From assembly GCF_006345805.1 (NCBI RefSeq), contig NW_021832231.1, forward strand, positions 930,001 to 994,000: a stretch of DNA of 64,000 nucleotides, in the 5' to 3' direction. Position numbers and translations under genes: made by a program. A model generated the notes under the pieces. It had not been told where the DNA came from. It did not search any database and worked only from the letters and a program-made list of their open reading frames with translations. This stretch comes from Octopus sinensis (taxonomy: Eukaryota). Positions 6,493 to 53,545 of this stretch are shown here, in pieces; position 1 is the stretch's first letter; each line of letters opens with the position of its first letter.

Positions 6493-6530
6493 ACAAGGGT
6501 TGTCAAATTAGTGATATGATTGTTAAATAA

Positions 6531-9779: not shown

Positions 9780-10080
9780 TATGTCCAGATACGGCGCAGA
9801 GAGCGTTTAGCTTTTTTGTTTATCTTTAAGCGCAAATATTCCACATGCTGAGAAAATGATAGGCACTGATCGAGAAAAGTCCAAGGATTTTCGGTTGTTT
9901 TGTCTCTGTTAAACGTCTGGTCCGATATTGAACTGACGACGGTCAGTCGTGAAAAGGGTAACCGAGGATTTGGCAGAAGAGAGTGTCAAGTTATTATGAA
10001 ATGGTCAAGTTGTCCAAGTGAAGCTGGAGGTTGGCAGAAGCTTGACTAAAAAAATCAGTAAATTGATTCTAACAGTTATA

Positions 10081-11620: not shown

Positions 11621-11720
11621 ATTATATAATCGTAAAATAAATTTTTATTAATCAAATATTAAAGTTAAAAATTTAAAGAAATTTGTTTTTTAAATTAATA
11701 CATGATTTTGTTCTAATTGC

Positions 11721-12244: not shown

Positions 12245-12329
12245 ATTATTAATTTAAAAGTTATTTTAGTCAAATTATAAAACCCATTCATTCGTGGGGT
12301 GATTTAAAAATGCCTAAATGAGTTTACTG

Positions 12330-12880
12330 TATTTAAAAATGACTTTAAAAAAGGAAAATCAGCCTGGTGACGCGGATAGTTAATTGCCTCTCAGATAATT
12401 AAATCATTATTTCCATATTTAAGCTAATACATCATAATACAATTGGTTGGTTATTGAGTTTTAACCTCCAATTTTGTCATCCAGTGCTTTTTATTTCTGC
12501 GTGGAAAGTTAACACTATTTGTAAACAGTCAATTTTTATTTCGGAAATAAAAATGCAATTATTCTCCAGTTTCCATTTTCTTGTATGAGGCTTGAAAGTT
12601 AGAAATTAATTTATGTGCTCCTCCAAAACACTGCAAGGGAAGCTTAAACTGCCCTACAAATAGAAGGGAAGTAGGTAGAGTGCATCGTATTGAAACGAGA
12701 ATGTCACCAGAGGGACTTTTGATGATTCTTTTCCGGTGACCATTAGGTGCCCCCTGAGCGTTTCCAAATACGTCTGAATTGCGAGATTAAAGCGAGTTGG
12801 TGAACCACATAACCCCATGTTAGATAACTAACTTAACTAACGTAGGGAAATGACTAAATAATAATTCATTTTGCAAAGAA
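12330..12880 (-). other. possible small unidentified gene
   Basis: ~75-codon open frame (...GNAQGAPNGHRKRIIKSPSGDILVSIRC...) with intron-like AT segments; no homology recognised. Confidence 0.25.
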
Positions 12881-12973
12881 ACCGGGACTGAAATACTAAC
12901 ATTGGAAATTCTTGTTAGTCTACTGGTTTATTATTTAATATTTAAGTTTATATTTAATTAGTATTGGAGGGTA

Positions 12974-15900
12974 ATGCGATCTGCTGCTGTTGAGTCATAC
13001 GTACCTAACGGCCAAAAGTACTTTCCAAATTGTGAGAAAAGCACGGTTATTCACACAACTGAATATATAGACTCCTAAATGGTTTCTGGAAAGTTGGAAA
13101 CACGACTGCGACGAGGAGATTGAAGTTTATTACCGAGGGACTGCGGTTATAATAACAAGAGGATATCAATCCTCTACGAGACAAATCTACAAGCAATTCG
13201 AACTAGAACACAGTCTTTTATCAGTTTATTCCCATTCCTGAAGAATATAGGTCTGCCTGCTCAAAATAGGGGGGAAACCTGAAAAGAGTGTGTGCATGCT
13301 GGACAAGAGTGGACTCCTCACAGTCCAAATGTCAGAGGGGAACTGCCACTACAACACTCTTCCAATCGTAGTCGAGGGGATGTGGCCAATCCTCGACGGA
13401 ATTTTGTTCAAACGGCAATGCTCGCCGGGGGATGTCAACACGTTAGAATACGCTAATCACAACAGGGATGTCTTGCCCAAAGTATTCAGTCTTTTTCACC
13501 CAATCGACGAATTGGCCCCAGTCCTGCTCGAAGGTTCTTTTTTAGTTTGATTGTGCAGAACAACGTCAGGTTATTGATTACTTTACTCGGGACTTTTATG
13601 AGATAATTTACACATCAAGCAGTCCGTCCTTGATATTCTTATATGATTGGTCAATCAATGCACACGTGGTCTGCACATTCAGGACAATTGGCCAAGAAGA
13701 CTTGCTTCTCCTCCAACAAAACAGAGAGAGGTCGAATGTGGGCAACACTATTCGTGATCAGTCCAACTCTATGATTCAACAGATGGCCATGTGCCCCTTC
13801 TCCACTCCACAAAATAAGTTTTTTTTCAAACAAGGCGTTCAAGTGCCTCTTCAACACATTCACACGTCTCCCCTGCCGCTTTCTCGCACTCGACGTTTTT
13901 CGTACTCCATTGCGTCCTCTCTCCCTGCTAATAGTGCCATTCCTTCCAACACCTCTGCCAGCTCACTCCCTAATGAAGTTTCTAAAGGTGTTCTTCCACA
14001 AATTTGTCTGGAAAGAGTTTGGGTTGAAAACACGTTTGTCGTTTTTCATTAGTCATTAGAGTGCCAAACAACACAAAAGCCACCAAAATATTTGTCAGTC
14101 TTGACATCTGTGATAATGTTTATTTGTGTTATCTGGTCTCCGACGAGTTGCGGTCAACTCATTAATTTAAATCTTGCAGAATGGTCACAATTCGAGATTC
14201 CAAGTACAACATGGTCAGCTCTATTCCCGCTATCGATGCGTGTTCTGTGAAAGGACTCAACGCCTTGCTCATTCAGAATCTTCAGGGGACCCTTTCTCTG
14301 TACAATGGTCCTAATCTGGTCGTATTGTTGAGTGATATTTAAGGTCACTAACATATCATTGTGTATTCCACGTTCCATGTCGACCAGTCAGCTCCTTGGC
14401 TCTCACAATTATTCAGTATTTGTGGTAATTTACTGACAATTAATAATCAGATGAGAAACGAGGTGGTGGAATGTATTCATTTATGGGAGTTATATTCCAC
14501 CGAAATTGGTTTACTAATTAGTATTACTCTGTAGTCGGGATGTGCCTTAAAGCTCTGTTTAAGTTATTGCCACTGCAAAAGTGCAGTAAGTTGTTTGGAA
14601 TGTGGTATTGTGGGGAGGTTGGGTGTGATGATGAGTGGTTTCGATTCCGCCATTTCCTTTTGTTTGTTTGTGGACTCGAATTTGAGGTGTGTGCCCAGTC
14701 TTGTGGTGACCATTCGCAAGCAAAGAGGGTTTGTCTTCAGAATGACGAGTCTATTCTTTCAATAAAAGCGTACAACGACGACTGCTTCCTTTCAAATTGG
14801 TTATTGGACACCCTGTTTGCTCTTCACTGTGTTTATGAAGTACATAAATCCCTTCAATGTAGAACCTGAAATTACTTCCACACTTGTTTGAGTATATTCC
14901 TGACTTGGGGGAAGTCCTGTATCACATTGCCCGGTGTGGTCATTCCTATTTACCTGATAGAAAGTCGTGTCTGATTGAATATATGCATCACTATTGGAGA
15001 GACGATCCTCGTCTCGAGTTTGACTTTGCGGCCTACCATTTCCGTATTATCATCTGGGTTATTTTTAGCCGTTCTTCAGTCAATTGAGTGCAAATATTTT
15101 TGTCCAACTCCGCCCAATATCATGGAATGGATGAGCACTGCTTATTCTAGCTCATCTCCTGGCAAATTTTTGTGTTTGGAGGGAGTGTGCACTGATACTC
15201 GGGTTGTAGTGCAGGTGAATTCCAGCCTTCATTCTCAGTTAATATCCGTAATCACGCAGCTGAGACTTTGCAGTGAAATGGAGTTACAGGTCAAGTCTGT
15301 TATGGGAGAGAATGTCAACTTTCGTGGTTCAGAGCGGATTATTATTCGAAAGAAGGAAAAGGAGTGGAGTCCAATGGAGAGAGTTGTGATGGCTATCAAT
15401 AAACTGAGTATTCACTCCACTTAAACAAGTAGAACTAACTTGGCTGCAGTTAGAAAGTATGCCTGGAAGTATATCTATTCCGTGCGCCCATTCCATATTG
15501 TGGGTCATTCGGTATTCCACGAACAGTCATGTCTTGTCATCACAGCTACTAAGTTGTCTCATTCCCTCAATTTGTAGACTCTCTAGTTGACCTGCAAAGG
15601 GAGACTGATGAGTGCAATGAAGAAGACGAGTTGGAGGTTTGCCCTTCAAATGAAATCAAGTTCCCTGAGGACAGCCGTCATTCGGATGCCCGTCGAATGT
15701 TAAGCAGTGAAGAACCAGTGATGATTGCAATTAAAGAACACGACGAGGATTTGATGTAAATCAGAATTAGTCACTGTAGAGATTTTGAACTCATGGAAGG
15801 AAAATTAGCAGATGGTTTCGTTCGAGTTTTCGCCAACTCAGTGGGACGGTGTGTTTCTCTCGTTATCGACTAGAGGGATGATGACATATTTAGAAAGTCG

Positions 15901-18415
15901 CCTTTATGGATCGGAGACATTTCAAATCCCTAAATTATGCGTCACTGGGAAACTGATTCCGAGGTGACCTATTTCCTCATATGCAGTGGGAGGATTCTTG
16001 AATCTAAAAAGACGGATGCGGATTTCTTGTCGTGGGGGGAGTTCCACAACGGCGTGGCTGCCGGACTGCGCATATCTCAAAACTGCAAGGTTTGAAACGT
16101 CCATTTTATTTAGGTGGACTCTGCGTGGATCTCGTACTACCGACTAAAGACTGGGAACATTTCGTCAGAATATGCTGGAATGTTGCTCGGACTGGGTCTT
16201 AATGGACATTTGCAGAATATTGCCTCTCGTTTACAACACAACTACCTCAAAATTGTCACTTCATATGGTATTACTTGCTAGGGAAACGCCCAATGCACTA
16301 TGGCAGTGCTGATTGGACTGGCTGCTGGAAAGTTGTTGTGTGTTATATAGTTCAGGTTCGGAAGTGCTGACTTGTCGGTGACTGCTCTGCTCAACGTGCA
16401 TAGTTCTGCCCTCCTCCCTTCGGCTGCTTCTCAATTCGAGTTTCCTGTCAGTGTGCAGTCATCAGCTCTCCTCGGAATAGGCATGGTTCATTTTCGTTCT
16501 TGGAATGTTTGCCTACTCAACACTCTTTTAAATGAGATCGGTTTGGTTACTAAATTAACGTCCAGCTGTCTTTAGTTCGCCGGACGAAAGCTGCGTGGGT
16601 CTGGAAGCCTATTCTCTGAGTGCTGCTTTATCCTTTGGAATGATTTCTATGGGAGTTAGCAAAGCCTCATTTATTTGTAGAAAGGGAGTGACTCCAAGAA
16701 TGATGAGGTTGTCAAAATGACTCAGACACTCTTGTACTTGATGGAAGGGGGTAGAAAGTCACGAATGGTATTTGTTTATTGATTTATTATTCTCAGTATT
16801 CCCTCAGAGGCAGTGTTCATAATAATCCAAGTCATGTTCTGAGAGTATATTTGTTATTAATTAGTGGAGGATGGGAATATGATTAGCAACCACATTTCCT
16901 CATTTGGGGCAACAATTGCTCTTGGCTTACTTTATTTTTCAACCTCCGATTGCAATATTATGGACACCCTGGCATTGCCAAAAGTGGGTTTGGTAGCCCT
17001 CTCATTCCACAAGCCTGAAATGTTAACACTCAGAGTGTTAATTTTTCATTCATTCGCAGGCACTTGCTCATTCATTTGTTGATTGGGAAAATCTCGAGTG
17101 CTCCGCTCAATATATCATAGACCATCTCCCTTCTTATGTTGCCAATTTATTGCTAAATATTAGATGTTTGATGGGGGACCCTTTTCACTGTCGACTATAT
17201 TAACCAAACAGAACAGCACTCTTATCTGGTAGTGAATATATCATTAGAACAGGCAATCGTTCTTGGCTCACATTGCCGGCTGGTCCTTGACGGTGGGATT
17301 TAAATTTATCGGAACTAAGGATGAAAAGGCAGTCGATACACTTGTAGATTTTTATATAATTCCAGATGAGTCTGTTTTGGCCTGTCTTGGATAGTTCTGA
17401 GTCCGCCGTTCAAGAGAACTGTCTTCTCTGTCTACTCCTCTCTGCCTCTATGGTGGAGTAAATATTTTTATAATTTTAGATCCTGGCCGGTAGCGGAAGT
17501 GTGCTTATTCTCAGAATATGTCGATACCTTAGATCTCGGGATAATCAGCCTCATGTCACCTATGGGTCTCATTTGGCTGTTGCTATGTCAATTGGCTTAT
17601 GTTTCTTTGGAGGATGCCGGTTTGCTGCGTAGTATCATGGCAGAGCTCGATTTGTCAACTCTCCTAAGGCAATTGTTGGTCTACTTTGTGCATTCTATCC
17701 TCAATTCCCAGCCACACCTGCGGATAATCGATATCATCTCCAGGCAATGCGACATCTCTATACACTAGCATCTCCTGGTCGACCTGCTGTTATAACAACT
17801 ACTTCGCATTCGAATATAATTGCTGTATTCTGCTGATTTAATGTTGACAGAAACGGCTGGAGGATTATATCATGAGGGAAATAGTCACAGTACTTATTGA
17901 TGTAGTAATTTGTAGTATTCGAGTAAACTGGCTCTTTCCTCTTGTTCGTATCTACTCCACTTGAACCACTTTCGACTAATTCACAAATTCTACATGTTTC
18001 CTAATTCGCTTTTGGACATATCGCAACGTGTCGGTCCTTCTCATATGCTTTATTTGGATGATGTGCATTCACAAATATTTGTCATTACGGATATGATTCA
18101 TCGTAGGTTGGAAAGGGACTTTGAGAGTAATGTGTAATCGTCTAATCTGCAGTGGGACAGTCACGACAATTATTGTGTTACATGTTGGGACCCAGGCTTT
18201 CGGATTATGGTAAAATACAGGCAGTGCTTATTTGGTTTGGAGTTGACTTGAGTTATGATAAGACCATTGGATCGTCGAGTATGACTGTTTTTTTATTGGT
18301 AGGCCCCTCGTCTGTGCCATCCACAACCCTTCCTGCTCTGCTGAAGTCAATTCCAAAAGCATCTCTTGATTTTTTAAGATTTTTGTGTGCAAGATTATCT
18401 AATGATACCCATTGA
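12974..18415 (+). CDS. ANAPC1: anaphase-promoting complex subunit 1, many microintrons
   Basis: After removing 24-27 nt introns: SLFHPIDELAPV, WGEFHNGVAAGLRIS, EYAGMLLGLGLNGHL, VQSSALLGIGMV, FGATIALGLLY, HLQAMRHLYTLA. Not every exon traced. Confidence 0.92.
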
Positions 18416-21179: not shown

Positions 21180-24100
21180 TTATCCTTCAAAAGGTATCAG
21201 ATGTTTAGAAGTATCAATTTCACTTAGTTGCTCGACAAAAATGATTGACCGAAAACATCGGGAAGAATTCTTCAACATGTGCATCACTAAAGAACCCTTC
21301 GTTGATCATTTTATCCACAAACAAAGCGACATATGAACCATCACTAAAAATTAATTATTAGATTCAACAGAGCACACTCCTTCGCCTGCTGGATAAGACT
21401 TAGAGAAATACAACACAATTCTAAAAAGTCCCGCCCCTTGCTTGAGTGATTTTGTGCGAAAAAAGACCCCAAACCAACAACAAATGCAGTGCCATCTAAC
21501 ACTCGCTGAGTTCCAACCTTTTGCGTAAAAACCAGTCTTTTATGAGCAGAAATTAACAGAGATAGAACAAGAATGGACAAATCAGGAATATTACCAGGTG
21601 TTATATAAATCTATGACAATAAAACCAGAAATACTTTCTTATATGGGTCGGACAAACCACCCAATTCGAGAAAAGCGTCAAGTTCGGCAAATAGTAAATC
21701 ATTGCTAGGATATGGCTTGGACCAGTCCAAATAGTGTTCCTGGAGAGATAGCATTATAGCTCTAAAATAATAACGGGTGGCCGTAACTTATCGAAAATTG
21801 TCAGCGAAGACTCGAGTCGACCAGAGTATTGCTCGAACAAAGTGTGTAGTTTAAGAGCGATTTGTTTACGCAAAATCACAAGCTGGCCAACCTACAAATA
21901 CTTATCAAATATAAACTCTGCACACTGCGAGCAACAAATTGTTAGAAACACGGGAAAACTTGTCGAAGCAAAACGCGATATATGAACAGACTGCAATAAA
22001 AACATAATGAATACAGTCTTGATCGTTGTACTCAAAGAGACTTTTAGAGAATGAAATGAGGGCGAACTCGGTTGTTCGTAGTTGGCCGAACTGTTCGACT
22101 AGTTGTTGCATATTATAGCATAGCATCAGTCCAAAGTACTTGTCCAGACCCCTCAGTCCGGCCACATCAATACTTTCCTGTCAAAATTAAAACTTTTAAA
22201 AATACATATAGCAAATCAAAAATTCTGACATCAGTCAAATTCCCTGTCTTGAACGATGTCCAGGAGCATGGGTTCAATTCAAAAAATGTTTTCCTGCGAA
22301 TTAAACAGTTTAGAATCAACCGTGGATCAGTTAAATCAAGTAGTTGATCAGCCAAGCATTTAATAAACGAAGAATTGTTTTGCCCAGAAATATTATAAAA
22401 CGGAATCGGTACTGTACTCGACTGATAAGAACTCGACCAATCATAAACCTAGAAATATTCGATGAAAAATAACCTTATTTCTCAAAAATAGATTGCATTC
22501 ATGTTCAACGTAGTAAAGCACAGTCCTTGTGAGTTCTTCTTGCCATATATGTAATCCTTGGACACAAATATAGTCCTGAGCATACTCCAAAGCTCTTCTG
22601 AAGGAGCCCATTCGAGCACCGAGTGAGTTGAGAACATCTTCAAGCTTTAAAGACCCTCCGCTGCTCTAAACACTGATACAAAAAAACACTTTTCCAATAA
22701 AAGGGACGACTAATCCATTAAAGAGCGTAGATGATATAAACTTTACAACTTCTCTCCTTATCCCATTTTCGAGCAAGTGTTTAAAATCTATCTTAACTAC
22801 TCCCACAAGAGTCGTCTCAATAAGGAGGATTCCCTGAGCCATGAGTGAGACCGAATTAATAATCTCGGCAACCTAATAAATGTGAGGACTAAACTACTTT
22901 ATATCGTTTTTCTAACTGAACGTAGTCTCTAAGTTCACTTTTCTGCAGACGAGAAGGAACTTGTCGCAAATCTTTGCTAAGATAGAAGGAAACTTGATTT
23001 AACTTTTCAAAAATAGTTTGGGGAATAATCTAGTATTGAGAAACACAAGAACAACTTGAAGAATATCTTCAATAAATTTGACAAGTAATGTGGAATAGTG
23101 TTGAGAAACCGATTCCATGTCAGGGGAGGACGCCTCATTGATTCTTATTAGAGGATAATTGAGGACTGAGGCAATCTTGAGAAAAGCAGCTCTGAGGCGA
23201 ATAACAGTTGAAGGATCGTCTTTGATAGTGGATTGCAAAAGGGGGACATATCTGTGCTATAATTGTCATAAAAGACTGTTTAAGGGCGGGCCACAAATAG
23301 GGGGAATCGGCAATGGCCTGCATTTGATTGAGAAGATCACTTTTGGTATTGGCGGCTCGAAACATTTTCTGGAGCGATTTTTGGACAGTGTTGAGGAGTT
23401 GTACTGCTTGAAGATTCTCTTGCAGCTCAGGATATCCCAAAATCTGCCAAATGTACCATCACTAAACAAACATTGCGCAAGGAAGTGATCACACTCCCTA
23501 TTTTCCTCCCGACGGCGATTCCATCAGCAAAATCAAGAGAATCAACAAGTTTGCTGACCCGCATAAACCACTTTTGGAAGGATTCTAGGAATAATGTAAC
23601 ATAAAACCATTTTTCTCAAACTCTGCCAATGATAGTGTTCCGTCGAATGCCCTGGATAGGCGTGTCAGAATTTGAGTGCAGGACGATTTATTATGGTTCC
23701 ACGTCTCTTCTCGTTTTACAACTAACAATTCGAATGTCTATTTGTTAGTTTTCAAATCAAACTTGCATCAACTCAAATTCGAGCTGAGAAAGAACAATGA
23801 ATAAGTGAAGTATTGCTTGGGAAGGAATTACTTTAATCATATTCTCATTAAATTGTCTCCATTTTTTTCGGCTGGTCTCTGGCCCACCCACAACTGCCAA
23901 ATATACCACAAGGAGAACCATCCGTGTTATTAACGTGGAGCATAGCCCAGCGTAAGGACAGATTGGCCCGTCTAACGAGGGCAACAAGACTGTCAATGTT
24001 GTTACTCACAGTTTTCTTAATTGCTCCAGCTCGAAGATGGTTAATAATCGATTCCGTCAGTGTTGGGATAGGGTCTACGTATGCTACCACTTGTTGCCGT

Positions 24101-25286
24101 ATGTTGTCGAGGACCAATGTGTTGGACAAGGCAGAAGAAGCGGCCTTGTATGAAGCCCACAAATCAATCAAATTAACAGGAATTCCCGTGTAGAGAGTAA
24201 TTATCTACGATTGGGAACCAGCCAGGAAACCCAATTATCAGGGAAGAAACGGTCCACTATCTCTCTCATAACGACTTTTTTGTCGTGAAGAATATCTGGA
24301 GAAAAAAAGAGTGTGACGCAAAGCATTGCAGCCTGTCCAGAATAGGCAGCAGACCGTTCTTCTGGCAAAGGAAATACCTCGCTCTGTCCATACAACTCAT
24401 CTGATCTGAGCCTGGTGATCGTCATTGCCACATATGACTCGGACATGGGTATTCTCCTTGGAATTTGTGGATTGAATTATACGCAAAATATGAATCCAGA
24501 CTCCTGCTCCCCGTTTGATTGCTTCGAATTAGTTTCCCGACCTGATCGACTGCAGACTCGGGAGAAGAGCGGTGGGAACTAAGATTAAGATGTAGTGGAT
24601 AACCCATATCGATAATAGGCCACCAACAACCGTTCTCTCACTATTCCGTCGATGGAAAAGTCGAGAACATACAGCATGATTCCATACAAGTAGACTAGCT
24701 CGCACTATGGAGATATATACAAAGTTAGGGCAACTAGGAGTTGTTTCCCGTCACTGTTTTGAAAAACGGTTTCGAGAGTAAGTTGAATATAGACTCCTTC
24801 CTCGAGTGCCTCAATAAAACTAGAAAACTGAGGGTAAATCCAAACCGGTTTATATCGCAAGCATATTTATAAATGGACTCAAATACTGCATAAAAACGCA
24901 GAATTATATCAAAGTAATTTTCCTTAAATTCTCGATCCAGTTCTACTAATTTCTGAAAAAATAATTAAAATGAATGGCTTAGGTAATTATTTGTAATAAT
25001 ATAGACCACAAACCTGATTTGATTCAAATTGGGAGTCGTAGAGAGCAGGGGAAACGAAATATGAAAAGTCCATTAAAATTTGTTGATATTTAATTGTGTC
25101 AGCGTTTGTTGGATCGAGATTGAATATTGGAGGCACGAAACCCGAAAGGCGTGTAATTTCAGTGATAATTGCATGTCCACGGGCGACAAGTTTAAGGAGC
25201 AACTGACCACACTGATTATCCTCACTAAGGAAATCGGATATAGGCTACAATCCTAAACTAATATTGTCTACCGAATTTAGGTCCAT
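21180..25286 (-). CDS. WASHC5: strumpellin (WASH complex subunit 5)
   Basis: DFLSEDNQCGQLLLKLVARGHAIITEITRLS; FPLPEERSAAYSGQAAML...MREIVDRFFPDNWV; LRAAFLKIASVLNYPLIRINEA; GLRGLDKYFGLML. Confidence 0.95.
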
Positions 25287-26903: not shown

Positions 26904-27260
26904 ATGGCTTTTGAGAATTCTGCAAATCCCTCTATAAGTACAAGCGAAACGGTAAGAATTAAATATTATAAATATATTTAGGTTGAAATATCTCGCCCTA
27001 ATCTTATTTTACGTCTTCGACCTCCTAAGAAATCTAAAAAAGTCAAATGGACAGAGGAAACAGTCGATAACGAGCATTTGAATAGGAAGAAATCAAAATG
27101 TTTTATTTCTTATATTGCATGTCGTCCAGGCTGCTGTGTATTCGAGAAACGCAAAAATTTTGACGAATCTACCTCTGAGGACGAGGAAGCTTACTGCACT
27201 CCGAATTGCTGCGGACATAAATCTAAAAATGATTATAAAAATCCTAATGTTTTTTTGTAA
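26904..27260 (+). CDS. PPP1R11: PP1 inhibitor-3 (Ypi1 homolog), 3 exons
   Basis: [26 protein letters not shown] after removing two 30-nt introns (first 26952-26981). Confidence 0.93.
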
Positions 27261-30480: not shown

Positions 30481-30594
30481 CTTATTATTAATTAAATGAT
30501 AGTAAAATTAATAAAATTAAAAAGTATGTTCATAAATGTATTTTTGAATAACTTGAAAATAAAATATATTAGTTTGGTACATATTTTAGAAAGA

Positions 30595-31716
30595 ATGTTG
30601 AGTGAAGTAAAGGTTTTTAGCGGATCGTCTTGCAAGGATTTATCAGAAAAAATATGCAAAGAACTTAATGTAAAACTTGGAGATGTGCAATTATTCAAAA
30701 AGAAAAACGGAGAGACATTGTTGTCCCATTCATTAATTAAACTTTTAAAGTGTTCAAATAAACGATTTTATCCGAGAAAAACATGTTTATATTATTCAAT
30801 CCGGGGCTGGAGACATCAACGACAACGTTGTCGAACTCTTGCAGTTGATTTACGCTTCGAAATTGGCTTCTGCGAAAAAAGTTACGGCCGTAATCCCATT
30901 TTTTCCGTATAGCTGCCCCGAAAATGACGAAAATGTACTTTTATCAGCTTTATTGTCAGATTCGCCCTAAATTGAACTCGAAACTGATCGCTATGCTGAT
31001 CACTGCCTCTGGTGCTGATCACGTGATCACAATGGACCTTCATTTTTCTCAAATTCAGGCAGTTCTAGGCCAGTTTATTCTATTAGGGGTTTTTTGACAT
31101 TCCTCTGGACAACATTTACCCGGAACCCTGTTTTCTTGAGTATATTCGAAACAATTTTGAACTCAATGATTTAGTTTTAATATCCCCGGACATTAGTGGG
31201 ACCAAAAGGTAATATAAAGTGAGTGTTTTCAGGGTTTCCGCTTATGCCGACAATCTAAACCTTAAGTTTGTGATAACCCACAAGGACAAACTCAAGGCAA
31301 ATGAGGAAAAGTCAATTATTTTGGTCGGAAATGTCGTTGACAAAATAGCCCTGATTATCGATGATGTCGTCGATTCTGCAACCACACTTGTTTTGGCTTC
31401 CAAAAAGTTTAATACGAGATATTTAAATCAGACTCATGGAAGAAGGGGCTCGGTCTGTCTTTGCTTGTGTCACTCACGGGATTTTAACAGGGTCGGCGGT
31501 TGAACAAATTGAAGATTCGCTAATTCAACAAGTTGTTCTGACTGATACGGTCGAACAAAAATCTCCCGCTGTGTTGAATAGTACTAAAATTAAGGTCATC
31601 GTGTGATTATTATTTCTAGATTTTGACCGTTAGCCATGAGTTTGCCAAAGCAATCAAGCACACTATGTATTAGCAGTTTATCTGATTATTTCAGTTTGGT
31701 TTCCATTCTTAATTAA
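30595..31716 (+). CDS. PRPS: ribose-phosphate pyrophosphokinase family protein, divergent
   Basis: [68 protein letters not shown]; microintrons throughout; 3' end approximate. Confidence 0.9.
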
Positions 31717-38489: not shown

Positions 38490-41120
38490 CTACCTCTGCA
38501 GGTACGTCCCAGTGACAATTGAGTTGGATTTATAACCACTTATAGCTTTTTCGACAGTTTCACCGACCATGGAGGATTTACTTTCAAGCCACAGGGGGAT
38601 TGGATCTTCAACTTTTTGGTGGTAAGCAAGCTTCAAAGCGAGCCTGCGAGACTTTTCAAATTTAGTTAAGATGGTGTCCTTCTTTTTAGAGAAGTACCAT
38701 CCCTCTTTTCCGTATAGTAGTCCCGGTAGGATCACCGTATTGAAAACGTAGAGGAAAGTATCAGGCTCCAAATTTAACTTCCTCAGGCAGAACAGAGCAT
38801 TAGTTGCTTTCCTTTTACTTAATTTTGCGTTTTCGAGATAGTTTCCCTTTTCATCGATGAACAAGCCAAGATATTTAATTGAGTTTTGTCGAGGTATGTT
38901 CTTGATCAGGCACGGTAAATTTATTAAATTTCTGCTTTCTGTGATTCTCAGTAATGCGGACTTCTCACGCGCAATAATGAACATATTTTCATCGCACCAT
39001 TGCTCCACTGTATTCATATATGATATAATCCTTTGTTCGGATAAGGCAGGTTTCGATGAAATGTCAAGGATTACAACATCATCGGCGTATATCAAAATTT
39101 CCGTCCGTGTGTTGACAGGAGACGGCAGATTGCTCATCACAATGTTGAATAATAGAGGACTGAGGACTGATCCTTGAGGGACGCCTCTTTTAAGTTTCAG
39201 TTCATCCGAGTCATAGTTCAGAAAGCTTATCACAGAGCGCCTGTCGCGGAGGAAGTCTTTTAGCCATAGGAATAGTCCTTTGTCTATGTGACACTTCGCC
39301 AGATGTCTAAGGAGACCGAGGTGCCAAACCATATCAAAGGCTTTTGAGATGTCTAGAGACACAATTGTCAGACACTCTTTGAAATCCAGAGCCTTTACAA
39401 TCGACGAATTGAGTGTATAAAGACAGTCAGCACAGGAACGACCCCTCCGAAAGCCCCACTGCACGTCTTTGAGATAACCATTTCTCTCGACGTGTTCAGA
39501 GAGTCGTTCAAACATTACCCTTTCCATTATTCGACTGATGGTAGGAATTAGGCTTATAGGCCTATAACTTGTCGCCAAATAACCAGGTTTTCCAGGCTTC
39601 CGTATCATCCTTACCTCCGTCAGTTTCCATGAAGAAGGGACGTATCCCAAGCTCACACTGCGGGAGAAGAGACATCCCAAATATTCGTAAAGTTGCTTGG
39701 GAGCTTCTTTGAACATGCGCATGGTTATCTTGTCCTTTCCCGGAGCGTTATTTTTGGAGTATCTAACTGCATTTTCCACGTCTTTGCACGTTATAGATTC
39801 CGAGCACATTGGTAATGAGCTAAGATTGTCTTCCAACTCTTTTTCCATATCAAACAAAGCTGAATCAGATAGATTTGTATCCGGATTGACTTCTTGTATT
39901 CTTTTGAGACTATCAGCAAATATGTTCGGGATTTCTTCATGAGATGCAGGGGATCCATCTTGTTTTAGCAGTTTAGGTATAGTTTTCTCAGACGTCGAGG
40001 TTAATTTCGAGTAGACCTTCCAAAAATTTGGACTTCCTTTATGTAGCTTTTTGCACTCAGTATTCCATTTTTTATCCTTCGCCACCTTCGCCGATTTTCT
40101 TATTTCTTCCGTAATGGTGAAGATTTCACTTTCCAAAACGGACCGGTCACGAAAATCTGCGCAGCGCCGGAGTTTGTTCCTTAGACATTGTTTTTTCCTT
40201 AGTAGGATTTCAACATTCATGTTTGGCATGTGAGTTTTCCTATTGTTTGAGACGATTTTTGTAGAATATGTTTCCAGATAAGACTTTATGTATCCAATAA
40301 GGGAATTGCTAGACTTCTCGAGGTCCTCAGATGAAGAATTTTCGTCAAGTTTAGGAGCGAAATTGCTCAGATAAAGTGTAAAACATTTTCGGTAGTGTTC
40401 CCAGTTTATAGTCGAGAGGTTATATCGTATAAAAGTTGGTTTACCCTTTAAAGGTCCAAGGTTGAGTTTGTATAAAATTGGTAGATGGTCACTTCCAATA
40501 TCATTTAAGGTGTACGGTTGTTCCATAAATTGAAGAGTAGACATAGAGACCAATGCTACGCCCAAATAGTCCCACCCTCCTGGTGAGTAATGATTTGGGG
40601 TTTTTGATGTGATGACCGAGAAACTGAGAGATTCTGAAAGCTTCTTAAGAATGATGCCATCCCTGTTGGTTCTCAGACAGCCAAAAGATGTGCATTTGGC
40701 ATTTAGATCCCCGAGGAGTATTGACAAATGATTGTGTTTATCGGCAAAAAAGTCCTTGATAAGCGATGAGTAATTGGAAAGGGATTTTGAGTACATCCCT
40801 CCGATTGTTACCCACCCTTTTTCCAGAAGGACGTCGATTGTGAGGAATTCACACAATTCCTCGGACACAATTTTTAGATTTTTCACCCTTAGAGTTGATT
40901 TGTAGTAGATAGAAGTGCCTGTTCCAGCGATCGAGCCCGGCTTCCACTTAATATCAAGGGAACGATAGCCATCCAAGTAGTAATCATCATGTTTTTTGAT
41001 TTTTGTTTCGTTTACGATCAAAAGGTCCACGGGGTTATGGGATAACATATCCTCAATCTCTGAACGCCTTCTCTTTAGAGAACGTGCGTTCACAGCGATA
41101 ATAGACAGAAAGGGGCTCAC
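38490..41120 (-). CDS. LINE ORF2: APE endonuclease plus reverse transcriptase, open for 876 aa
   Basis: VNARSL, NETK, LGDLNAK, SDHLPI; YRPISL, QWGFRRGRS, LDISKAFD, GVPQGSVLSPLLF, YADD, KYLG. Confidence 0.95.
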   Translation of the reverse strand: MSPFLSIIAVNARSLKRRRSEIEDMLSHNPVDLLIVNETKIKKHDDYYLDGYRSLDIKWKPGSIAGTGTSIYYKSTLRVKNLKIVSEELCEFLTIDVLLEKGWVTIGGMYSKSLSNYSSLIKDFFADKHNHLSILLGDLNAKCTSFGCLRTNRDGIILKKLSESLSFSVITSKTPNHYSPGGWDYLGVALVSMSTLQFMEQPYTLNDIGSDHLPILYKLNLGPLKGKPTFIRYNLSTINWEHYRKCFTLYLSNFAPKLDENSSSEDLEKSSNSLIGYIKSYLETYSTKIVSNNRKTHMPNMNVEILLRKKQCLRNKLRRCADFRDRSVLESEIFTITEEIRKSAKVAKDKKWNTECKKLHKGSPNFWKVYSKLTSTSEKTIPKLLKQDGSPASHEEIPNIFADSLKRIQEVNPDTNLSDSALFDMEKELEDNLSSLPMCSESITCKDVENAVRYSKNNAPGKDKITMRMFKEAPKQLYEYLGCLFSRSVSLGYVPSSWKLTEVRMIRKPGKPGYLATSYRPISLIPTISRIMERVMFERLSEHVERNGYLKDVQWGFRRGRSCADCLYTLNSSIVKALDFKECLTIVSLDISKAFDMVWHLGLLRHLAKCHIDKGLFLWLKDFLRDRRSVISFLNYDSDELKLKRGVPQGSVLSPLLFNIVMSNLPSPVNTRTEILIYADDVVILDISSKPALSEQRIISYMNTVEQWCDENMFIIAREKSALLRITESRNLINLPCLIKNIPRQNSIKYLGLFIDEKGNYLENAKLSKRKATNALFCLRKLNLEPDTFLYVFNTVILPGLLYGKEGWYFSKKKDTILTKFEKSRRLALKLAYHQKVEDPIPLWLESKSSMVGETVEKAISGYKSNSIVTGTYLQR

Positions 41121-42225
41121 GCCTGATCAATCCTTTCCCTTCCAAGAGAAAGGGACAACAGATTGTTGATATCGAGGCCTTTTTCATCGCATATAGCGAT
41201 TATTTTGCGAATCATAGAGGTAAGCTCAACGTCGATAGTTGGTGCTTTCCTCTTAAAGCGGGTTGGAGGCTCTGTGTGTTGTGTATTGGGAGGCAAAGTT
41301 GCGTCTTCACTAACATCTGTTTGCGTTGAGGAGTCAAAACAGCGGGAAATTGTGGGTTTTCGCCATACAGATTCAACGGCCTCCGCTTTTGACCATACAG
41401 TTTTTGAGTGTTCTGCTTTGGCCAGTCTGTCCCTGGCACTGAGCTGCTTTTTTAGTTGTTCAGTGGCTGCCTTAGCTGAAGAGCAGCCACCGTAGCAAGC
41501 CAAATGCCCACTCAGACCGCAGTTTATACATTTTTTCTCAGTTTTTCCTTTAATCGGGCACATTTTCATATTATGATCACCACCACAGAAAAGACATCTT
41601 TCCACTTCTTTGCAGAAGTTAGCAATGTGACCAAATTGTTGGCAGCGAAAGCATCTTGTTGCTGGGTTTTTAAACCATTCGCATCGTATTTTTTGAAATC
41701 CCACTTCGATTCCCATCCTTACAAGCGAAGTGGCTTCTGCCCTCGAATTCAGACTCAACTTTCCAACAGGTATACTCCGTCCATTTTTGTAGAACCGTTG
41801 AAAGTAAAACCGGGGTTGAGAATTTCTTTGAGGTAAAGATCCAGGTCTTCCTCGGAGACCCAAGATGGTATTCCCTTCAAGACTACGGTCGATGGTTGCA
41901 GACTGCACGCAGAAATATAATGGCCGTCCTGGCCAAATGGTTTGTTATACTCGAAGTCATTCACAAACGAGTCCCTATCACTAGAATTTGAGAATTCGAG
42001 GGTAAAGTCCCCAGACTTCCTGGCAGTAATTCGGGCCTTCTGTGCAGTCTCGGATTTGGTTAGAATATTAAAGGACTTTATTCGTCCAATCGCATAATTT
42101 TTTATCTGCAGCGAGAGGACAAGAGACTCAGTACAGTTTGGATTGTTCAAAGAGACTTGAGAGGAGTGTGACCCCTCCTCATCTTTGATACAGATTTCAT
42201 CTTTGCGTTCAAGCTCTTGAGACAA
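41117..42225 (-). CDS. LINE ORF1 (gag-like), one frameshift near 41815
   Basis: CFRCQQFGHIANFC, CLFCGGDHNMKMC, CINCGLSGHLAC; two overlapping ORFs switch frame at a C4 run. Confidence 0.85.
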
Positions 42226-42856
42226 AGAAGATTTTGAGCTTGTATTTGGGATTATATATATTCGATAACAAAAATTAAAATCGATGCCAAAGCAGAATGA
42301 GCTTTAAAACCGATTTCATAAATAAAAATAATATTTTAAAATTTATAATTGATATTTTAGAATAATGAGAAAAAATCTAAATGCTTCATAATTTATTAAA
42401 ATGTCAAAACAAGAATCTTCTGAAGGAGCAAGCCTGTCTGCACAGTTCATTTTTGATTAGAAGACCTAATTTTAGAGATTAAAACGAAAAAATAGCAATG
42501 AGATCTGTCAAATTATTACCCCCCTCACAACCTAAACCAAATTAGCGTTCAGTATTCATTGATTTTACTTTTTCTATTAAGGTCTACTTATAAATTATTT
42601 TATGGGATTCAATGGAAAACTTAAGTTATTTCAATTTTAATTTTAAATCATGTTAAAATTTTAAATAATTTAATAAATATATTTGTTGATGATAGGCTTG
42701 TTAGCTGTCAAAGTCGCGTCTAGCGCTCGGTCGCGCGCTGCGCTCGCGACATATTACCTTAACATTGAATGGATTTTGAACCTAACTGTCTTCAAATTTA
42801 TCCAAAATGTCATTTTTTCAGCGGAAGCACTCAAAAATTCAATTTTTCGTTTTAAT

Positions 42857-42971
42857 CGGCTGGCCATTGTTCGGGGCAACGCACACTGCGTCCTCGCCGC
42901 TGGAACGAACTTAACTATTTTCGGTGTTAATTGTTAGTAAAAAAAAAAAAATTAGAATAAAAAAAAAAAAA
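42857..42971 (+). mobile_element. ~115-bp CRE-like 3' end with poly(A) tail
   Basis: RLAIVRGNAHCVLAAGT; A-tail; candidate TSD gttttaat at 42849-42856 and 42972-42979. Confidence 0.72.
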
Positions 42972-43701
42972 GTTTTAATGCAATTACTTTTTTATTTAAA
43001 ATAAAAACCGTTTGATATTTTCCTTGGAGCTAAAATGTAAATTTATTAAGTTTGTAATTGCATTCAATTTGTTTAAACAAACAGTTTAACAAGAGTAAGA
43101 GATGCGTTAGGCATTATATGATTGCAATATTTTTTTGAATCTTTTATGAAATTATTGTTTCTTATAAATATTTATTTAAGACATTTTATTTATTAAAGAC
43201 CAAAGGACCAGGGTAAAGCAGAATAAAAGCTCGGATGCGAATATATTTTAATAATTAAAAACTATTATTAAATAATTTATTATTTACGGAATCCTAAAAC
43301 TGGTTTCGCGGAACCCAGGTTGGAAATCACTGTTATAATTGATTCTTCAAAAATATGTATGATTACAAATATTAAAAAACATATATTTATTTGATAACTG
43401 GAAAATTTTATCAGATGCAGAATCAGAAAATTCGATTTTTATCATTACTAATCATGTATTCCATAGTATTCCCAAAATTAATCTCTGATATTTTTGGGAA
43501 AATCTACCCTTTTTTTACTTTTTGATGTTTTAGAATTAATTTCGAAAATATTCTCTTTTATATACTTGATGTTAAAATGGAGATAAGGATTTTTTGCTTA
43601 ATCATAATATAAAACGTTCTAATAAATAAAAGATTTAAATATCCTTTTATTCTTTTTATTTGTAATGATTGTGTAGTTTATAATATTGATTGTTTTTAGT
43701 G

Positions 43702-44288
43702 ATGGGAAAAAGCAGCAGTTCAAGCAGCAGTAGTAGTAGTTCTGACGATGATAAGCATTTCAAAAAAAGCAAATCCGATAAAAAATTGAGAAAGAAATTA
43801 ATTAAACAGGCACCATATGAAATATTATTAATATTGAATAGGGGCACTTAGCTAAAGGGTATAAAGGAGAAATCCCACATCATCTTTATCCCCAAAAATA
43901 TGATCAAGCTAATATTCCAAATACAGCAGGAAACCTTTATTCCCCTGTTTTAAATCTACAATATACTCAACAGCAACCCGGCCAATACCCTCAACACCCA
44001 AACCAATATGTTCAACAGCAACCCGGCCAATACTCTCAGCACCAAAACCAATATGCTCAACAGCAGCCCGGGCAATACCCTCAGAATCCCAACCAATATG
44101 CTCATCAGCAGCCCGGGCAATACCCTCAGAATCCCAACCAATATGCCCAACAAGTAAACCTCTATCTCTTTTAACAGCAGCATCCAATGACTTATGAAGG
44201 AGCCCATCAGGTGTTTGATAGGGCAGGATTGCCTACTCAACGAATGGAGCGTCCGTCTGAGGATTATAAGTACAAATATAATCCATAA
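43702..44288 (+). CDS. orphan 176-aa protein: poly-Ser, basic patch, Q/P/G/Y/N 14-aa repeats
   Basis: Exons 43702-43809, 43842-44153, 44178-44288 (all phase 0); 32-nt GC-AG and 24-nt GT-AG introns; repeat QQQPGQYPQNPNQYA x~4.5 (42-nt unit). Confidence 0.72.
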
Positions 44289-44989
44289 AATTATTATTGA
44301 TAATCGATATACCACTAATACGTTATTTAACATACACGGTTTAATATTTTTTAATTTAATTTTAAAAAAGTAAAATTATAAGCAACTGCATAACAGGTAC
44401 TACAGTCAAACCCCGTCAGAATAAAAATCCCAACTTGGGGCACCCTTGATTTTTTGGGGGATTTTATTTTGTAGTACTTTTCCATAAATAATTTACAAAT
44501 TTGTAAATTATAAAAACTCAAGTATGGGGAAACTTAGTAATTTATTTTACTTCCAAGATTTCTATTGAAACAAAAAGTAAAATTGCAAAGTGCCTATAAA
44601 CTTTTTCTGAAAGAGAAATTGCAAAAAAATCAAAATGAGCAAAGCACTATTTCCCGAATCAAAAAAAGCATTTCTTCTTTTATTAATACAGGATCAGTAA
44701 TTTCAAGATAAGTTTAAATAGATGAAGTTTAACCAGTTTCTAATGAAGCAAATCAATTTGAAAAAATTGAAGAATTACCTTTTGAAGTTTTTCGTCGTCT
44801 AAGGAAAGATTGCTTTTCTATTTCGGGTACATTAATCGAGACAGCGAAAAAAATATCAAAAAAATTGAATTATTTAACAATTTTTAAAGCTTCAAACGGT
44901 TGGTTAGACATTGGCAATTTTTTTTAATTCGATAATTTATCGAAAACTTGTGGTCATAAAAATATTTTTAATTTTGATTAATCAAATGA

Positions 44990-52396: not shown

Positions 52397-53545
52397 TTAA
52401 AAGTAATGGGCATCAATCTGCTTAATATTCGGCAATATTTTAAGTACACTTGCGACGTAAAGTGGAGATATATTCCCTAAAAATACGAAAGCAAAAAAAC
52501 TTTTAGTTGATTCAAACCAGAGAGGATTCCTTTCCAAATAAATACAGCTAAGATTCAACTTGTCGACCAGTTGGTTGAGTTCCGCAAAATCTTCCAATTG
52601 GTTATTGTCAAACTTTCATAATTGAACAACAACAACCCAGAATTCTTCGAGGAAATTAAGAGAATCCAAATTCTCCAAATGTTTAATGAAATTGCAGGAC
52701 AGATCAAGGATTTTCAAATGTATCTTGTAATGAGAAAAGACGGCAACCATATTCTGCAGCCCTTCCATCACAGTAATACCGTTGTGACTCAGATAGAGTT
52801 GTCTCATTTCAGTAAGTGTACCCAGACCCTCTATTTTAGTGATTCGGTTACTCTGCAATCAAAAAAAGGCCCAACCTGTAAAGAGAAGATCCTCAACTGA
52901 GTGTTATTTTCCAATCCCTCTATTTTCCTGATTTTGTTTTTCCCCAAATATAGTTCCTCCAAGCTGGTTAAATGAGCGATATTCGATATATTCTTAAATG
53001 TACATCACTTTTAATACTCTCAGTTTATTATCTCCCAACTCCAGTAGACTCAGCTTCTCGTTACATTCAAGGTTTTCAATCACTTGGATGCGATTGTGCA
53101 CAAAATATAACTTCCGCAATTTCACGAGTGTGTCGAGTCCCTCGATCTTGGCTATTCTGTTGAACGATAGGTCGAGGATTCTCAATTTATATTAAATGAC
53201 CAACTCTAAATTGACAAGAGACTCCAAATTCTCGATTTTCTCGATCAAATTGTCGTATAACACGAGTTCTACTAAATTCTCGTTTAAACAAGAAAGATTT
53301 TCTATTTTCTTGATCAAATTACGTCTGAATGAAATTTCCTATTTTATCAACATCTATCCAAACTTTGCAGCATAGCAAACACTCAAGGTTCTCTATGTTT
53401 TTGTACCTGCACTCGTCTAAGTACACAGATTCTGAATTTGGATCATCGACAGTCATTACATTGGCTGTTTCCACATTCTATTTAATTATATGAATATATT
53501 TTATTCAACATTTATGTCTGCCTCACTAAAGTCCTCATTTCCCAT
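52397..53545 (-). CDS. PPP1R7: PP1 regulatory subunit 7 (SDS22), LRR protein
   Basis: [73 protein letters not shown]; microintrons. Confidence 0.92.

What the first reader, a model, noticed from the sequence alone, without database searches (positions are those of the whole stretch)
43702..44288. Hidden orphan gene encoding a prion-like Q/N/Y/G/P repeat protein
It is absent from the ORF track, which shows only antisense shadows. Two phase-0 microintrons (32-nt CAG|GC...AG; 24-nt GT-AG), each removing a stop, give MGKSSSSSSSSSSDDDKHFKKSKSDKKLRKKLIKQ... then QQQPGQYPQHPNQYV / QQQPGQYSQHQNQYA / QQQPGQYPQNPNQYA / HQQPGQYPQNPNQYA. Regularly spaced Tyr in a Q/N/G/P background is typical of prion-like, phase-separating domains (compare Sup35 repeats). 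MG-x-x-x-S plus a basic patch fits myristoyl membrane anchoring, with phosphorylatable Ser next to acidic residues. Inference: a lineage-specific membrane-tethered condensate or structural protein.
Basis: partly seen in the sequence, partly recalled or inferred. Interest (0 to 1): 0.7.

Follow-up and report, generated by a model that had tools for sequence, protein, structure and literature searches.

The report
Probable unannotated dicyemid repeat-protein gene
The sequence is as described and is probably a small unannotated gene for a disordered glutamine/tyrosine-rich repeat protein, but its tiny introns are credible only because this "octopus" contig appears to come from a dicyemid kidney parasite; expression and function are untested.

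Summary
An ATG exon (43702-43809), a 32-nt GC..AG segment, a 312-nt exon holding 4.3 in-frame 45-nt repeats, a 24-nt GT..AG segment and a final exon ending at TAA 44286-44288 splice into a 176-aa protein.

Context changes the reading. The window is 100% identical to a contig of the Octopus sinensis assembly GCA_006345805.1, yet its genes are not octopus-like. About 11 conserved genes lie in 64 kb. Eleven homology-verified introns are 23-32 nt, six of them 24 nt. Among animals this is reported only for myxobolids and for dicyemids, which live in the renal sacs of O. sinensis. So the 24-nt intron is ordinary here. The 32-nt GC-donor intron is the weak point.

Support for a real gene is intrinsic only:
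- a G+C island bounded by the ATG and the stop;
- 7 of 11 repeat substitutions at codon position 3;
- a serine run built from four codons.

No homolog was found among 1.84 billion representative proteins, Pfam or PDB, and no transcript data could be reached. I put a real gene at about 0.55.

The core meets a Q/N-rich criterion (37 Q+N in 80 residues, no charges, Tyr every 7-8) and is predicted disordered. Myristoylation, membrane tethering and condensate formation are conjecture.

The parts
43676..43699 (+). Possible 5'UTR microintron-like segment GTTTATAATATTGATTGTTTTTAG (24 nt), ending 2 nt before the ATG. Speculative.
   Evidence: Read directly. It has the same length and the same GTT...TTTTTAG style as verified introns of the SDS22-like gene. 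The upstream frame has a stop at 43666-43668, so it could only lie in a UTR. Such patterns are common in AT-rich DNA.
43702..43809 (+). Exon 1: ATG in a G(-3)/G(+4) context, encoding MGK, an 11-Ser run, DDD and a Lys-rich basic stretch (36 codons).
   Evidence: It is the only open frame of the three in DNA of 18-42% G+C. The Ser run uses AGC, AGT, TCA and TCT codons. AlphaFold2 predicts a helix at residues 24-36 with pLDDT 78-91 for residues 21-50.
43810..43841 (+). Putative intron 1: 32 nt, GC donor, AATAG acceptor, phase 0, shifts the reading frame.
   Evidence: G+C is 0.22, like the flanks and the verified introns (mean 0.30). Its length equals that of the first intron of the SDS22-like gene. 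No GT lies between 43741 and 43858, so the only options of 45 nt or less use GC donors. Not verified.
43842..44153 (+). Exon 2: 104 codons. It holds 42 codons of degenerate Tyr/Pro/Gln/Asn-rich sequence, then the 15-residue repeats.
   Evidence: G+C is 0.35-0.51, against 0.15-0.26 in the flanks.
43959..44152 (+). Tandem repeat: 45-nt unit, 4.3 copies, in frame (QQQPGQYPQNPNQYA and variants).
   Evidence: 89% matches, no indels, and 7 of 11 substitutions at codon position 3 (6 of them synonymous).
44154..44177 (+). Putative intron 2: 24 nt, GT-AG, phase 0, contains an in-frame TAA.
   Evidence: It has the modal length (24 nt) of the verified introns in this window. G+C is 0.33.
44178..44288 (+). 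Exon 3: 36 codons plus the TAA stop (44286-44288).
   Evidence: G+C of 0.44-0.48 falls to 0.20 directly after the stop.
44420..44425 (+). AATAAA hexamer 132 nt after the stop; a possible polyadenylation signal (inferred).
   Evidence: Read. Such hexamers are frequent in AT-rich DNA, so this is weak evidence.

Best explanation
This is probably a real, unannotated protein-coding gene of a dicyemid parasite whose DNA was assembled into the Octopus sinensis genome. I propose three exons joined by two microintrons, encoding a protein of about 20 kDa and pI 9.5.

The protein would have four parts:
- an N-terminal Met-Gly, a run of 11 Ser and an acidic triad;
- a short amphipathic polybasic helix;
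- an uncharged, disordered Q/N/P/Y domain of 15-residue repeats with Tyr every 7-8 residues;
- a short charged tail.

What is shown: the sequence anatomy, the microintron nature of the host genome, the lack of homologs, and the compositional and predicted-disorder properties.

What is inferred: that the gene is transcribed and spliced as drawn. My proposed mechanism is that the Tyr-laddered Q/N-rich domain mediates multivalent self-association, with Tyr as stickers and Q/N/P/G as spacers. The basic N-terminal region would dock it on an anionic partner, either a membrane (if Gly2 is acylated) or nucleic acid.
For: Genome context:
- The window is 100% identical to GCA_006345805.1 contig VCDQ01002408.1.
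- Eleven introns of 23-32 nt are verified by homology: globin, FDX2-like, gapless against human FDX2 at E=1e-37, and SDS22-like against human PPP1R7 at E=1.3e-72.
- Pfam finds strumpellin on 15 ORF segments, plus PRPS, PPI_Ypi1, NDUF_B12, DUF676, NF-YA and HLH.
- Dicyemid introns average 26 nt (PMC2222250). D. japonicum was collected from O. sinensis and has 36.7% G+C and 49% repeats (PMC6736024). Among animals, introns under 30 bp are reported only in myxobolids and D. japonicum (PMC13644364).

The candidate itself:
- A G+C island matches the ATG and the stop exactly.
- Both intron segments are poorer in G+C than their adjoining exons.
- The 24-nt intron has the modal local length.
- Repeat substitutions are biased to codon position 3, and the unit is a multiple of 3 without indels.
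- The Ser run is encoded by two codon families.
- Chance bridging of an ORF end occurs in 4-6% of controls.

Protein properties: 37 Q+N in 80 residues, no charged residues in the core, Tyr spacing 7/8. The repeats have pLDDT below 50, and there is a helix at residues 24-36.
Against: - There is no homolog anywhere and no transcript evidence.
- The repeat is open in 5 of 6 frames.
- The codon-position bias is only P=0.12 after correction for three frames.
- Intron 1 needs a GC donor, whereas all 11 verified introns use GT, as do the 19 in an unverified strumpellin model.
- The locus lies in a transposon-rich stretch, between a LINE at 38.5-42.2 kb and transposon fragments at 46-48 kb.
- A codon-usage test could not discriminate.
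- The function is inferred from composition alone.
Confidence: 0.55

Rival explanations
1. This is a non-coding 45-nt minisatellite with a neighbouring AGY microsatellite in intergenic DNA. The 'gene' is built from chance open frames joined by chance GT/GC..AG pairs.
For: - The repeat has no stops in 5 of 6 frames.
- No homologs were found.
- 4-6% of ORF ends in control sequence can be bridged in the same way.
- A GC donor is needed at the first junction.
- The neighbourhood is transposon-rich.
Against: - The G+C island begins at the ATG and ends at the stop.
- Exon 1's frame is uniquely open for 53 codons in DNA of 18-42% G+C.
- Substitutions favour codon position 3.
- The unit length is a multiple of 3 with no indels.
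- Ser is kept across the AGY and TCN codon families.
- The 24-nt segment has exactly the modal intron length of this genome.
Confidence: 0.25
2. The gene is real or formerly real, but the 5' junction is not a GC-AG intron. Three alternatives: exons 1 and 2 are contiguous and a base is missing from the GGGG run at 43841-43844 (an assembly error, or a genuine frameshift making a pseudogene); or a long 113-152-nt GT-AG intron runs from the Ser run into exon 2; or a 23/26-nt GC-AG intron starts at 43844.
For: - Enumeration shows no GT-AG option under 113 nt and three GC-AG options of 45 nt or less.
- Exon 1's frame stays open through the 32-nt segment up to 43848.
- GC donors were not seen in the verified introns or the unverified strumpellin model.
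Against: - The 32-nt segment has 0.22 G+C, like introns and flanks. As coding sequence it would add a hydrophobic YEILLIL stretch unlike the rest of the protein.
- About 8.7 kb of other coding sequence in the window shows no frameshift, so an indel error at this spot is unlikely.
- A long intron would discard a 36-codon open Lys-rich frame.
Confidence: 0.12
3. The coding strand is the other one. The uninterrupted 125-aa ATG ORF at 43956-44333 (minus strand) would encode a Leu/Val/Gly-rich hydrophobic repeat protein.
For: It is a single ORF that needs no introns and has an ATG start.
Against: - Its codons are in register with the plus-strand codons, so 7 of 11 repeat substitutions fall on its first codon position and change the amino acid.
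- It starts 45 nt inside the AT-rich flank and stops inside the G+C island, so it does not explain 43702-43955.
- Antisense ORFs are expected opposite CAA/CAG-rich coding sequence.
Confidence: 0.05

Closest known systems
Q/N-rich prion-like low-complexity domains of yeast (for example the N domain of Sup35, or Rnq1)
   Same: High Q+N content (37 of 80 residues), no charged residues in the core, regularly spaced Tyr, oligopeptide repeats, predicted disorder.
   Different: No sequence homology. The repeat unit is 15 residues and Pro-rich (18 Pro), which disfavours amyloid. No attached functional domain was found. Prion behaviour is untested.
Tyrosine-ladder low-complexity domains of FET proteins (FUS, EWS, TAF15)
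   Same: An uncharged, disordered region rich in Q, G, S, P and Y, with Tyr at short regular intervals. This is the textbook sticker-and-spacer arrangement for phase separation (general knowledge).
   Different: No RRM, zinc finger or RGG region was detected by Pfam. The protein is only 176 aa and has no homology.
Elastomeric or structural Q/P/G/Y repeat proteins (wheat HMW glutenin repetitive domain, insect resilin 15-residue repeats)
   Same: Short tandem repeats, including 15-mers, dominated by Q, P, G and Y. Tyr is available for cross-linking (from memory; a lead only).
   Different: Those proteins are secreted or storage proteins with signal peptides. Here there is no hydrophobic N-terminus (maximum Kyte-Doolittle 19-mer is -0.08), there are only 4.3 repeats, and there is no homology.
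Myristoyl-plus-basic membrane anchors (Src family, MARCKS, ARF6)
   Same: Met-Gly start, Ser at position 6, and a polybasic stretch that AlphaFold2 models as a helix.
   Different: Lys at position 3 is excluded by the PROSITE myristoylation pattern, although ARF6 is a natural exception (both from memory). The basic cluster starts about 17 residues from Gly2, beyond an 11-Ser run. Lipidation is untested. The Ser/Lys-rich stretch equally resembles a nuclear localisation signal, with a sub-threshold SR-25 hit.
Dicyemid microintrons (Dicyema japonicum, D. acuticephalum)
   Same: Intron 2 (24 nt, GT-AG, no polypyrimidine tract, A residues just upstream of the AG) matches the published class (PMC2222250, PMC6543705, PMC13644364) and the 11 verified introns of this window.
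   Different: Intron 1 has a GC donor. At 32 nt it sits at the long end of the local range.

Membership tests
Microintron class of this genome (11 homology-verified introns in the window) | Length 23-32 nt | tested here: met
   Intron 2 is 24 nt, the modal value (6 of 11). Intron 1 is 32 nt, equal to the longest verified intron (SDS22-like intron 1)..
Microintron class of this genome (11 homology-verified introns in the window) | GT donor and AG acceptor | tested here: inconclusive
   Intron 2 is GT..AG and meets the feature. Intron 1 is GC..AG and does not meet the donor requirement. All 11 verified introns begin with GT, as do the 19 in the unverified strumpellin model.
Microintron class of this genome (11 homology-verified introns in the window) | Lower G+C than the adjoining exons | tested here: met
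   Intron 1 is 0.22 and intron 2 is 0.33, against exon segments at 0.32, 0.35, 0.51 and 0.44. Verified introns average 0.30.
Microintron class of this genome (11 homology-verified introns in the window) | Removal from mRNA (junction reads) | not testable with these tools
   No transcript data could be reached.
Q/N-rich prion-like domains | At least 30 Q+N in an 80-residue window (criterion of Michelitsch and Weissman, recalled from memory) | tested here: met
   37 Q+N in residues 63-142.
Q/N-rich prion-like domains | Few charged and few hydrophobic residues; disordered | tested here: met
   The window has 0 D/E/K/R and 5 I/L/V/F/M/W residues. pLDDT is 41-48 across the repeats (single-sequence model).
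Q/N-rich prion-like domains | PLAAC HMM score; self-propagating amyloid in vivo | not testable with these tools
   PLAAC is not installed and no experiment is possible. The 18 Pro residues argue against a classical amyloid core (inference).
N-myristoylated proteins | Gly at position 2 and a small residue (Ser/Thr/Ala/Gly/Cys/Asn) at position 6 | tested here: met
   The sequence begins M-G-K-S-S-S.
N-myristoylated proteins | PROSITE PS00008: position 3 must not be E, D, R, K, H, P, F, Y or W (pattern recalled from memory) | tested here: not met
   Position 3 is Lys. Natural exceptions exist, so this lowers the claim without excluding acylation.
SR-25 nuclear splicing-associated protein (PF10500) | Pfam gathering score of 40 bits | tested here: not met
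   21.4 bits, E=2e-4, residues 4-36 only. This is a low-complexity Ser/Lys match.
Octopus sinensis nuclear gene (as the assembly labels it) | Cephalopod gene architecture: kb-scale introns and roughly one gene per 80 kb (general knowledge) | tested here: not met
   About 11 conserved genes lie in 64 kb, with introns of 23-32 nt. The intact LINE ORF2 has no relative above 26% identity in any annotated proteome.
Dicyemid genome | Introns of about 22-30 nt with only GT and AG conserved; repeat-rich; G+C about 37%; host O. sinensis | tested here: met
   Intron lengths and splice sites, G+C of 0.28-0.42, several transposon families, and the assembly's source species. Compared with PMC6736024, PMC2222250, PMC6543705 and PMC13644364.
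Dicyemid genome | Nucleotide identity to a dicyemid reference assembly or transcriptome | not testable with these tools
   No dicyemid sequence is in the searchable collections. The globin query found no near-identical protein other than the octopus-labelled model.

The most novel reading that the evidence does not exclude
A dicyemid-specific protein that is N-acylated and held on membranes by a polybasic helix, and that forms tyrosine-driven condensates or fibrils through a Q/N/P/Y repeat domain. Its mRNA would be made by removing a 32-nt GC-AG intron, which would be an unusually short non-canonical intron for an animal.
Probability: 0.1. Interest if true: 0.55.

Novelty: new member of a known kind. 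Interest (0 to 1): 0.33.

Why it matters
If the gene is real, it adds one more lineage-restricted low-complexity protein to a poorly known, fast-evolving parasite. That is a modest gain.

The context matters more. A contig of about 1 Mb in the public Octopus sinensis assembly has the gene structure of a dicyemid. At least one protein called on it and named Octopus sinensis (LOC115228753) is a chimeric parasite/transposon model. Conserved genes on it, for example the FDX2-like gene, are not called. Anyone using this assembly for cephalopod gene content, orphan-gene counts or horizontal-transfer claims would be misled. Conversely, such contigs are a free source of long-read dicyemid sequence.

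Tried and rejected
- **Ciliate code.** I first considered a ciliate genetic code. I rejected it because standard stops end the conserved genes and the transposons are of metazoan types.
- **Codon-usage score.** A log-odds score trained on the three verified genes was unusable. The globin training sequence was one base out of frame, and leave-one-out tests did not separate true frames from the others.
- **Greedy ORF chaining.** A greedy chain builder made wrong splice choices in the known genes. I replaced it with homology-guided manual splicing. The dynamic-programming strumpellin model looks reliable only in its 3' two-thirds.
- **Exact-product look-ups.** Look-ups for window ORFs found nothing: the hAT-like ORF, LINE ORF2, the antisense 125-aa ORF, unspliced exon 1, and the 170-aa ORF at 46.1 kb.
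- I did not attempt it by another route.
- **RNA genes and prokaryotic signals.** tRNA and Rfam scans found nothing. The sigma-70 and terminator scan is irrelevant for a eukaryote.
- **Transposon or duplication.** No flanking inverted or direct repeats suggest a transposon, and there is no second copy in the window.
- **Literature.** Searches for the repeat motif, for octopus microintrons, and for reports of dicyemid contamination of this assembly found nothing.
- **Other parasites.** I considered and rejected myxozoans (SDS22-like and FDX2-like align closely with the human proteins; the best globin relatives are bivalve), apicomplexans and ciliates (metazoan transposons, strumpellin, standard code).

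Full report
**1. The observation**

The region reads exactly as described.
- An ATG at 43702 opens a 36-codon frame encoding MGK, 11 Ser, DDD and a Lys-rich stretch.
- Removing 43810-43841 (32 nt, GC...AG) joins it to a 104-codon frame at 43842-44153.
- Removing 44154-44177 (24 nt, GT...AG, with an in-frame TAA) joins that to 36 more codons and a TAA at 44286-44288.

The product is 176 aa. Tandem Repeats Finder gives a 45-nt unit, 4.3 copies, 89% matches and no indels at 43959-44152. At the default ORF length only antisense ORFs are listed, because exon 2's frame has no start codon.

Small corrections: the Ser run has 11 residues, not 10. The 32-nt segment changes the reading frame rather than excising a single in-frame stop.

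**2. What the window is**

There are no tRNA or Rfam hits. The long ORFs are metazoan transposons: a LINE with endonuclease, reverse transcriptase and a zinc-knuckle ORF1, plus pogo, Tc1 and hAT-like elements. There is also a globin.

The globin's best relative is a protein named Octopus sinensis LOC115228753. Its locus in assembly GCA_006345805.1, contig VCDQ01002408.1 (1.03 Mb), is 100% identical to window 1-16879. So the window is part of that assembly, probably positions 930001-994000.

**3. The genes are not built like octopus genes**

*Globin.* The globin reads MGCSLSS...EKHIK, then GTTTTAACGTCTGCATAATTTTAG (4748-4771, 24 nt, two in-frame stops), then IVHKTWSHL... Bivalve homologs align without a gap only if those 24 nt are removed. 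The NCBI model instead fuses a mariner fragment to the second exon.

*FDX2-like gene.* It lies at 11845-12243 and needs introns of 25 nt (11952-11976) and 26 nt (12065-12090). The spliced product aligns gaplessly to human FDX2 over 113 residues, E=1e-37. It is not among the called genes of that stretch.

*SDS22/PPP1R7-like gene.* It lies on the minus strand (53545-52397) and needs eight introns of 32, 25, 24, 25, 23, 24, 24 and 24 nt. The product aligns to human PPP1R7 at E=1.3e-72 with a single 7-residue insertion.

*Other genes.* Pfam scans of ORF segments of 45 aa or more add strumpellin (15 segments, 21.2-25.1 kb, minus strand), ribose-phosphate pyrophosphokinase, PPI_Ypi1, NDUF_B12, DUF676, NF-YA and HLH. 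A dynamic-programming model of strumpellin uses 19 GT-AG introns, 13 of them 22-26 nt.

This amounts to about 11 conserved genes in 64 kb, with introns of 23-32 nt.

**4. Whose genome is it?**

The literature points to a dicyemid.
- Introns under 30 bp are reported among animals only in myxobolid myxozoans and Dicyema japonicum, and in D. japonicum little more than GT and AG is conserved (PMC13644364).
- Dicyemid introns average 26.2 +/- 1.9 nt (PMC2222250) with a median of 27 (PMC6543705).
- D. japonicum was collected from the renal sac of O. sinensis. Its genome has 36.7% G+C, 49% repeats and many LINEs (PMC6736024).

Three further observations fit.
- The intact LINE ORF2 here has no relative above 26% identity among 5.8 billion clustered proteins, which include annotated O. 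sinensis proteins such as P0005.
- The best globin relatives are spiralian, namely bivalves at 39-47% identity.
- The O. sinensis assembly shows 5.2% duplicated metazoan BUSCOs, against 0.4-0.5% for O. vulgaris and O. bimaculoides. Only 86% of it sits in chromosome-scale scaffolds (PMC10700109). A second metazoan genome in the assembly would explain this; that link is my inference.

I conclude that the contig is dicyemid DNA. Identity to a dicyemid reference could not be tested.

**5. The candidate in that light**

*Intron 2* is an ordinary member of the local class: 24 nt, GT-AG, and A residues just before the AG.

*Intron 1* has the right length, a low G+C of 0.22 and an AATAG end, but a GC donor. 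Enumerating every ATG/donor/acceptor combination gave these results:
- No GT lies between 43741 and 43858.
- The only options of 45 nt or less are GC-AG: 32 nt from 43810, or 23 or 26 nt from 43844.
- GT-AG introns would have to be 113-171 nt long.
- A missing base in the GGGG run at 43841-43844 would also put exons 1 and 2 in one frame.

I favour the 32-nt GC-AG intron for three reasons:
- The segment is compositionally intron-like.
- As coding sequence it would add a hydrophobic stretch unlike the rest of the protein.
- About 8.7 kb of other coding sequence in the window shows no frameshift, so an assembly indel here is unlikely.

The junction nevertheless remains unverified.

**6. Evidence that it codes**

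- *G+C island.* G+C rises from 0.15-0.28 to 0.42 at the ATG. It dips over the end of exon 1 and intron 1 (0.18), runs at 0.32-0.58 through exon 2, dips at intron 2, holds 0.45-0.48 in exon 3, and falls to 0.20 right after the stop.
- *Repeat substitutions.* Among the four full repeat units, the 11 minimal substitutions fall 2, 2 and 7 on codon positions 1, 2 and 3, and 6 are synonymous. Binomial P is 0.039, or 0.12 after allowing for three frames.
- *Repeat unit.* It is a multiple of 3 and has no indels.
- *Ser run.* It mixes AGC, AGT, TCA and TCT codons.
- *Chance bridging.* In control sequence, 4% (Markov) to 5.9% (reversed) of ORF ends can be bridged by a 22-27-nt GT-AG segment into 36 or more open codons. 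In the real window the figure is 10.7%.

**7. Evidence against**

- The repeat is open in 5 of 6 frames.
- No homolog exists in the word-indexed search. The exhaustive phmmer search returned four hits, all repeat-on-repeat artefacts. PDB gave nothing, and Pfam gave only a sub-threshold SR-25 match to the Ser/Lys stretch.
- No second copy exists in the window.
- No transcript data could be reached.
- The antisense 125-aa ORF is in register with the sense codons. The substitution pattern is therefore wrong for it, and it does not match the G+C island.

Overall I put a real gene at about 0.55. A chance minisatellite reading gets 0.25, and the rest goes to pseudogene, other 5' structures or the antisense ORF.

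**8. What the protein would be**

It would be 20.4 kDa with pI 9.45 and no hydrophobic segment. Residues 63-142 hold 37 Q+N, 11 Pro and 10 Tyr, with no charged residue. Tyr recurs every 7-8 residues.

A single-sequence AlphaFold2 model has mean pLDDT 54.7. The repeats score 41-48. One confident element is a helix at residues 24-36 in the polybasic stretch.

The most likely mode of action, inferred from composition only, is a disordered multivalent self-associating domain docked by a basic N-terminal region. Whether the docking partner is a membrane or nucleic acid cannot be told:
- A membrane is suggested by Gly2 and Ser6, but Lys3 violates the PROSITE pattern as I recall it.
- Nucleic acid is suggested by the Ser/Lys-rich, NLS-like stretch.

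**9. Comparison and verdict**

By composition it resembles yeast Q/N-rich prion domains, FET-type tyrosine-ladder domains and Q/P/G/Y elastomeric repeats. It is homologous to none of them and has no accompanying domain.

It is best filed as a candidate lineage-restricted low-complexity protein gene of a dicyemid. The larger point is that the contig's species label is wrong.

Noticed in passing
window 1-64000 (GCA_006345805.1 contig VCDQ01002408.1, probably 930001-994000): The whole window, labelled Octopus sinensis, has dicyemid-type gene structure: about 11 conserved genes in 64 kb with introns of 23-32 nt. It is most likely parasite DNA assembled with the host. The assembly's 5.2% duplicated BUSCOs (PMC10700109) would fit this.
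   Followed up: partly
window 4643-5227 (+): A neuroglobin-like globin starts MGCSLSS, an acylation-type N-terminus also seen in its bivalve relatives. It has one 24-nt intron (4748-4771) and lacks the usual internal globin introns. The NCBI model LOC115228753 instead fuses a mariner transposase fragment to exon 2 and adds a different C-terminus.
   Followed up: yes
window 11845-12243 (+): A mitochondrial ferredoxin-2-like gene with 25- and 26-nt introns aligns gaplessly to human FDX2 (E=1e-37). It is not among the genes called in this stretch. Its first exon or exons upstream of 11845 were not worked out.
   Followed up: partly
window 52397-53545 (-): A complete SDS22/PPP1R7-like leucine-rich-repeat gene with eight introns of 23-32 nt (E=1.3e-72 to human PPP1R7).
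   Followed up: yes
window 21200-25100 (-), 26982-27257 (+), about 30500-31600 (+): Three more genes with microintrons: strumpellin (WASH complex subunit 5, about 19 introns), a PPP1R11/Ypi1-like inhibitor, and ribose-phosphate pyrophosphokinase. NDUF_B12, DUF676, NF-YA, HLH and Pif1 hits lie somewhere in 17.5-43.8 kb, and a weak THOC7 hit lies in 43.6-64 kb. These were not located.
   Followed up: partly
window 38490-42225 (-): An apparently intact non-LTR retrotransposon: an 876-aa endonuclease/reverse transcriptase ORF plus a zinc-knuckle ORF1. Its best relative in 5.8 billion clustered proteins is only 26% identical.
   Followed up: partly
window about 13200-18200 (+): The most G+C-rich stretch (0.40-0.42) holds many long ORF segments that 22-27-nt GT-AG segments can chain together. 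None has a Pfam hit. It may hold one or more further unannotated, fast-evolving genes or an old transposon.
   Followed up: no
window about 42690-42980 (+): A G+C-rich segment of about 250 nt ends in two A-runs, like a SINE or a retroposed small RNA. ARAGORN and Rfam found nothing there.
   Followed up: no
window 44551-44645 versus 8710-8810: A stretch of about 100 nt downstream of the candidate is 71% identical, in inverted orientation, to a segment near 8.7 kb. It is probably a small dispersed repeat.
   Followed up: no
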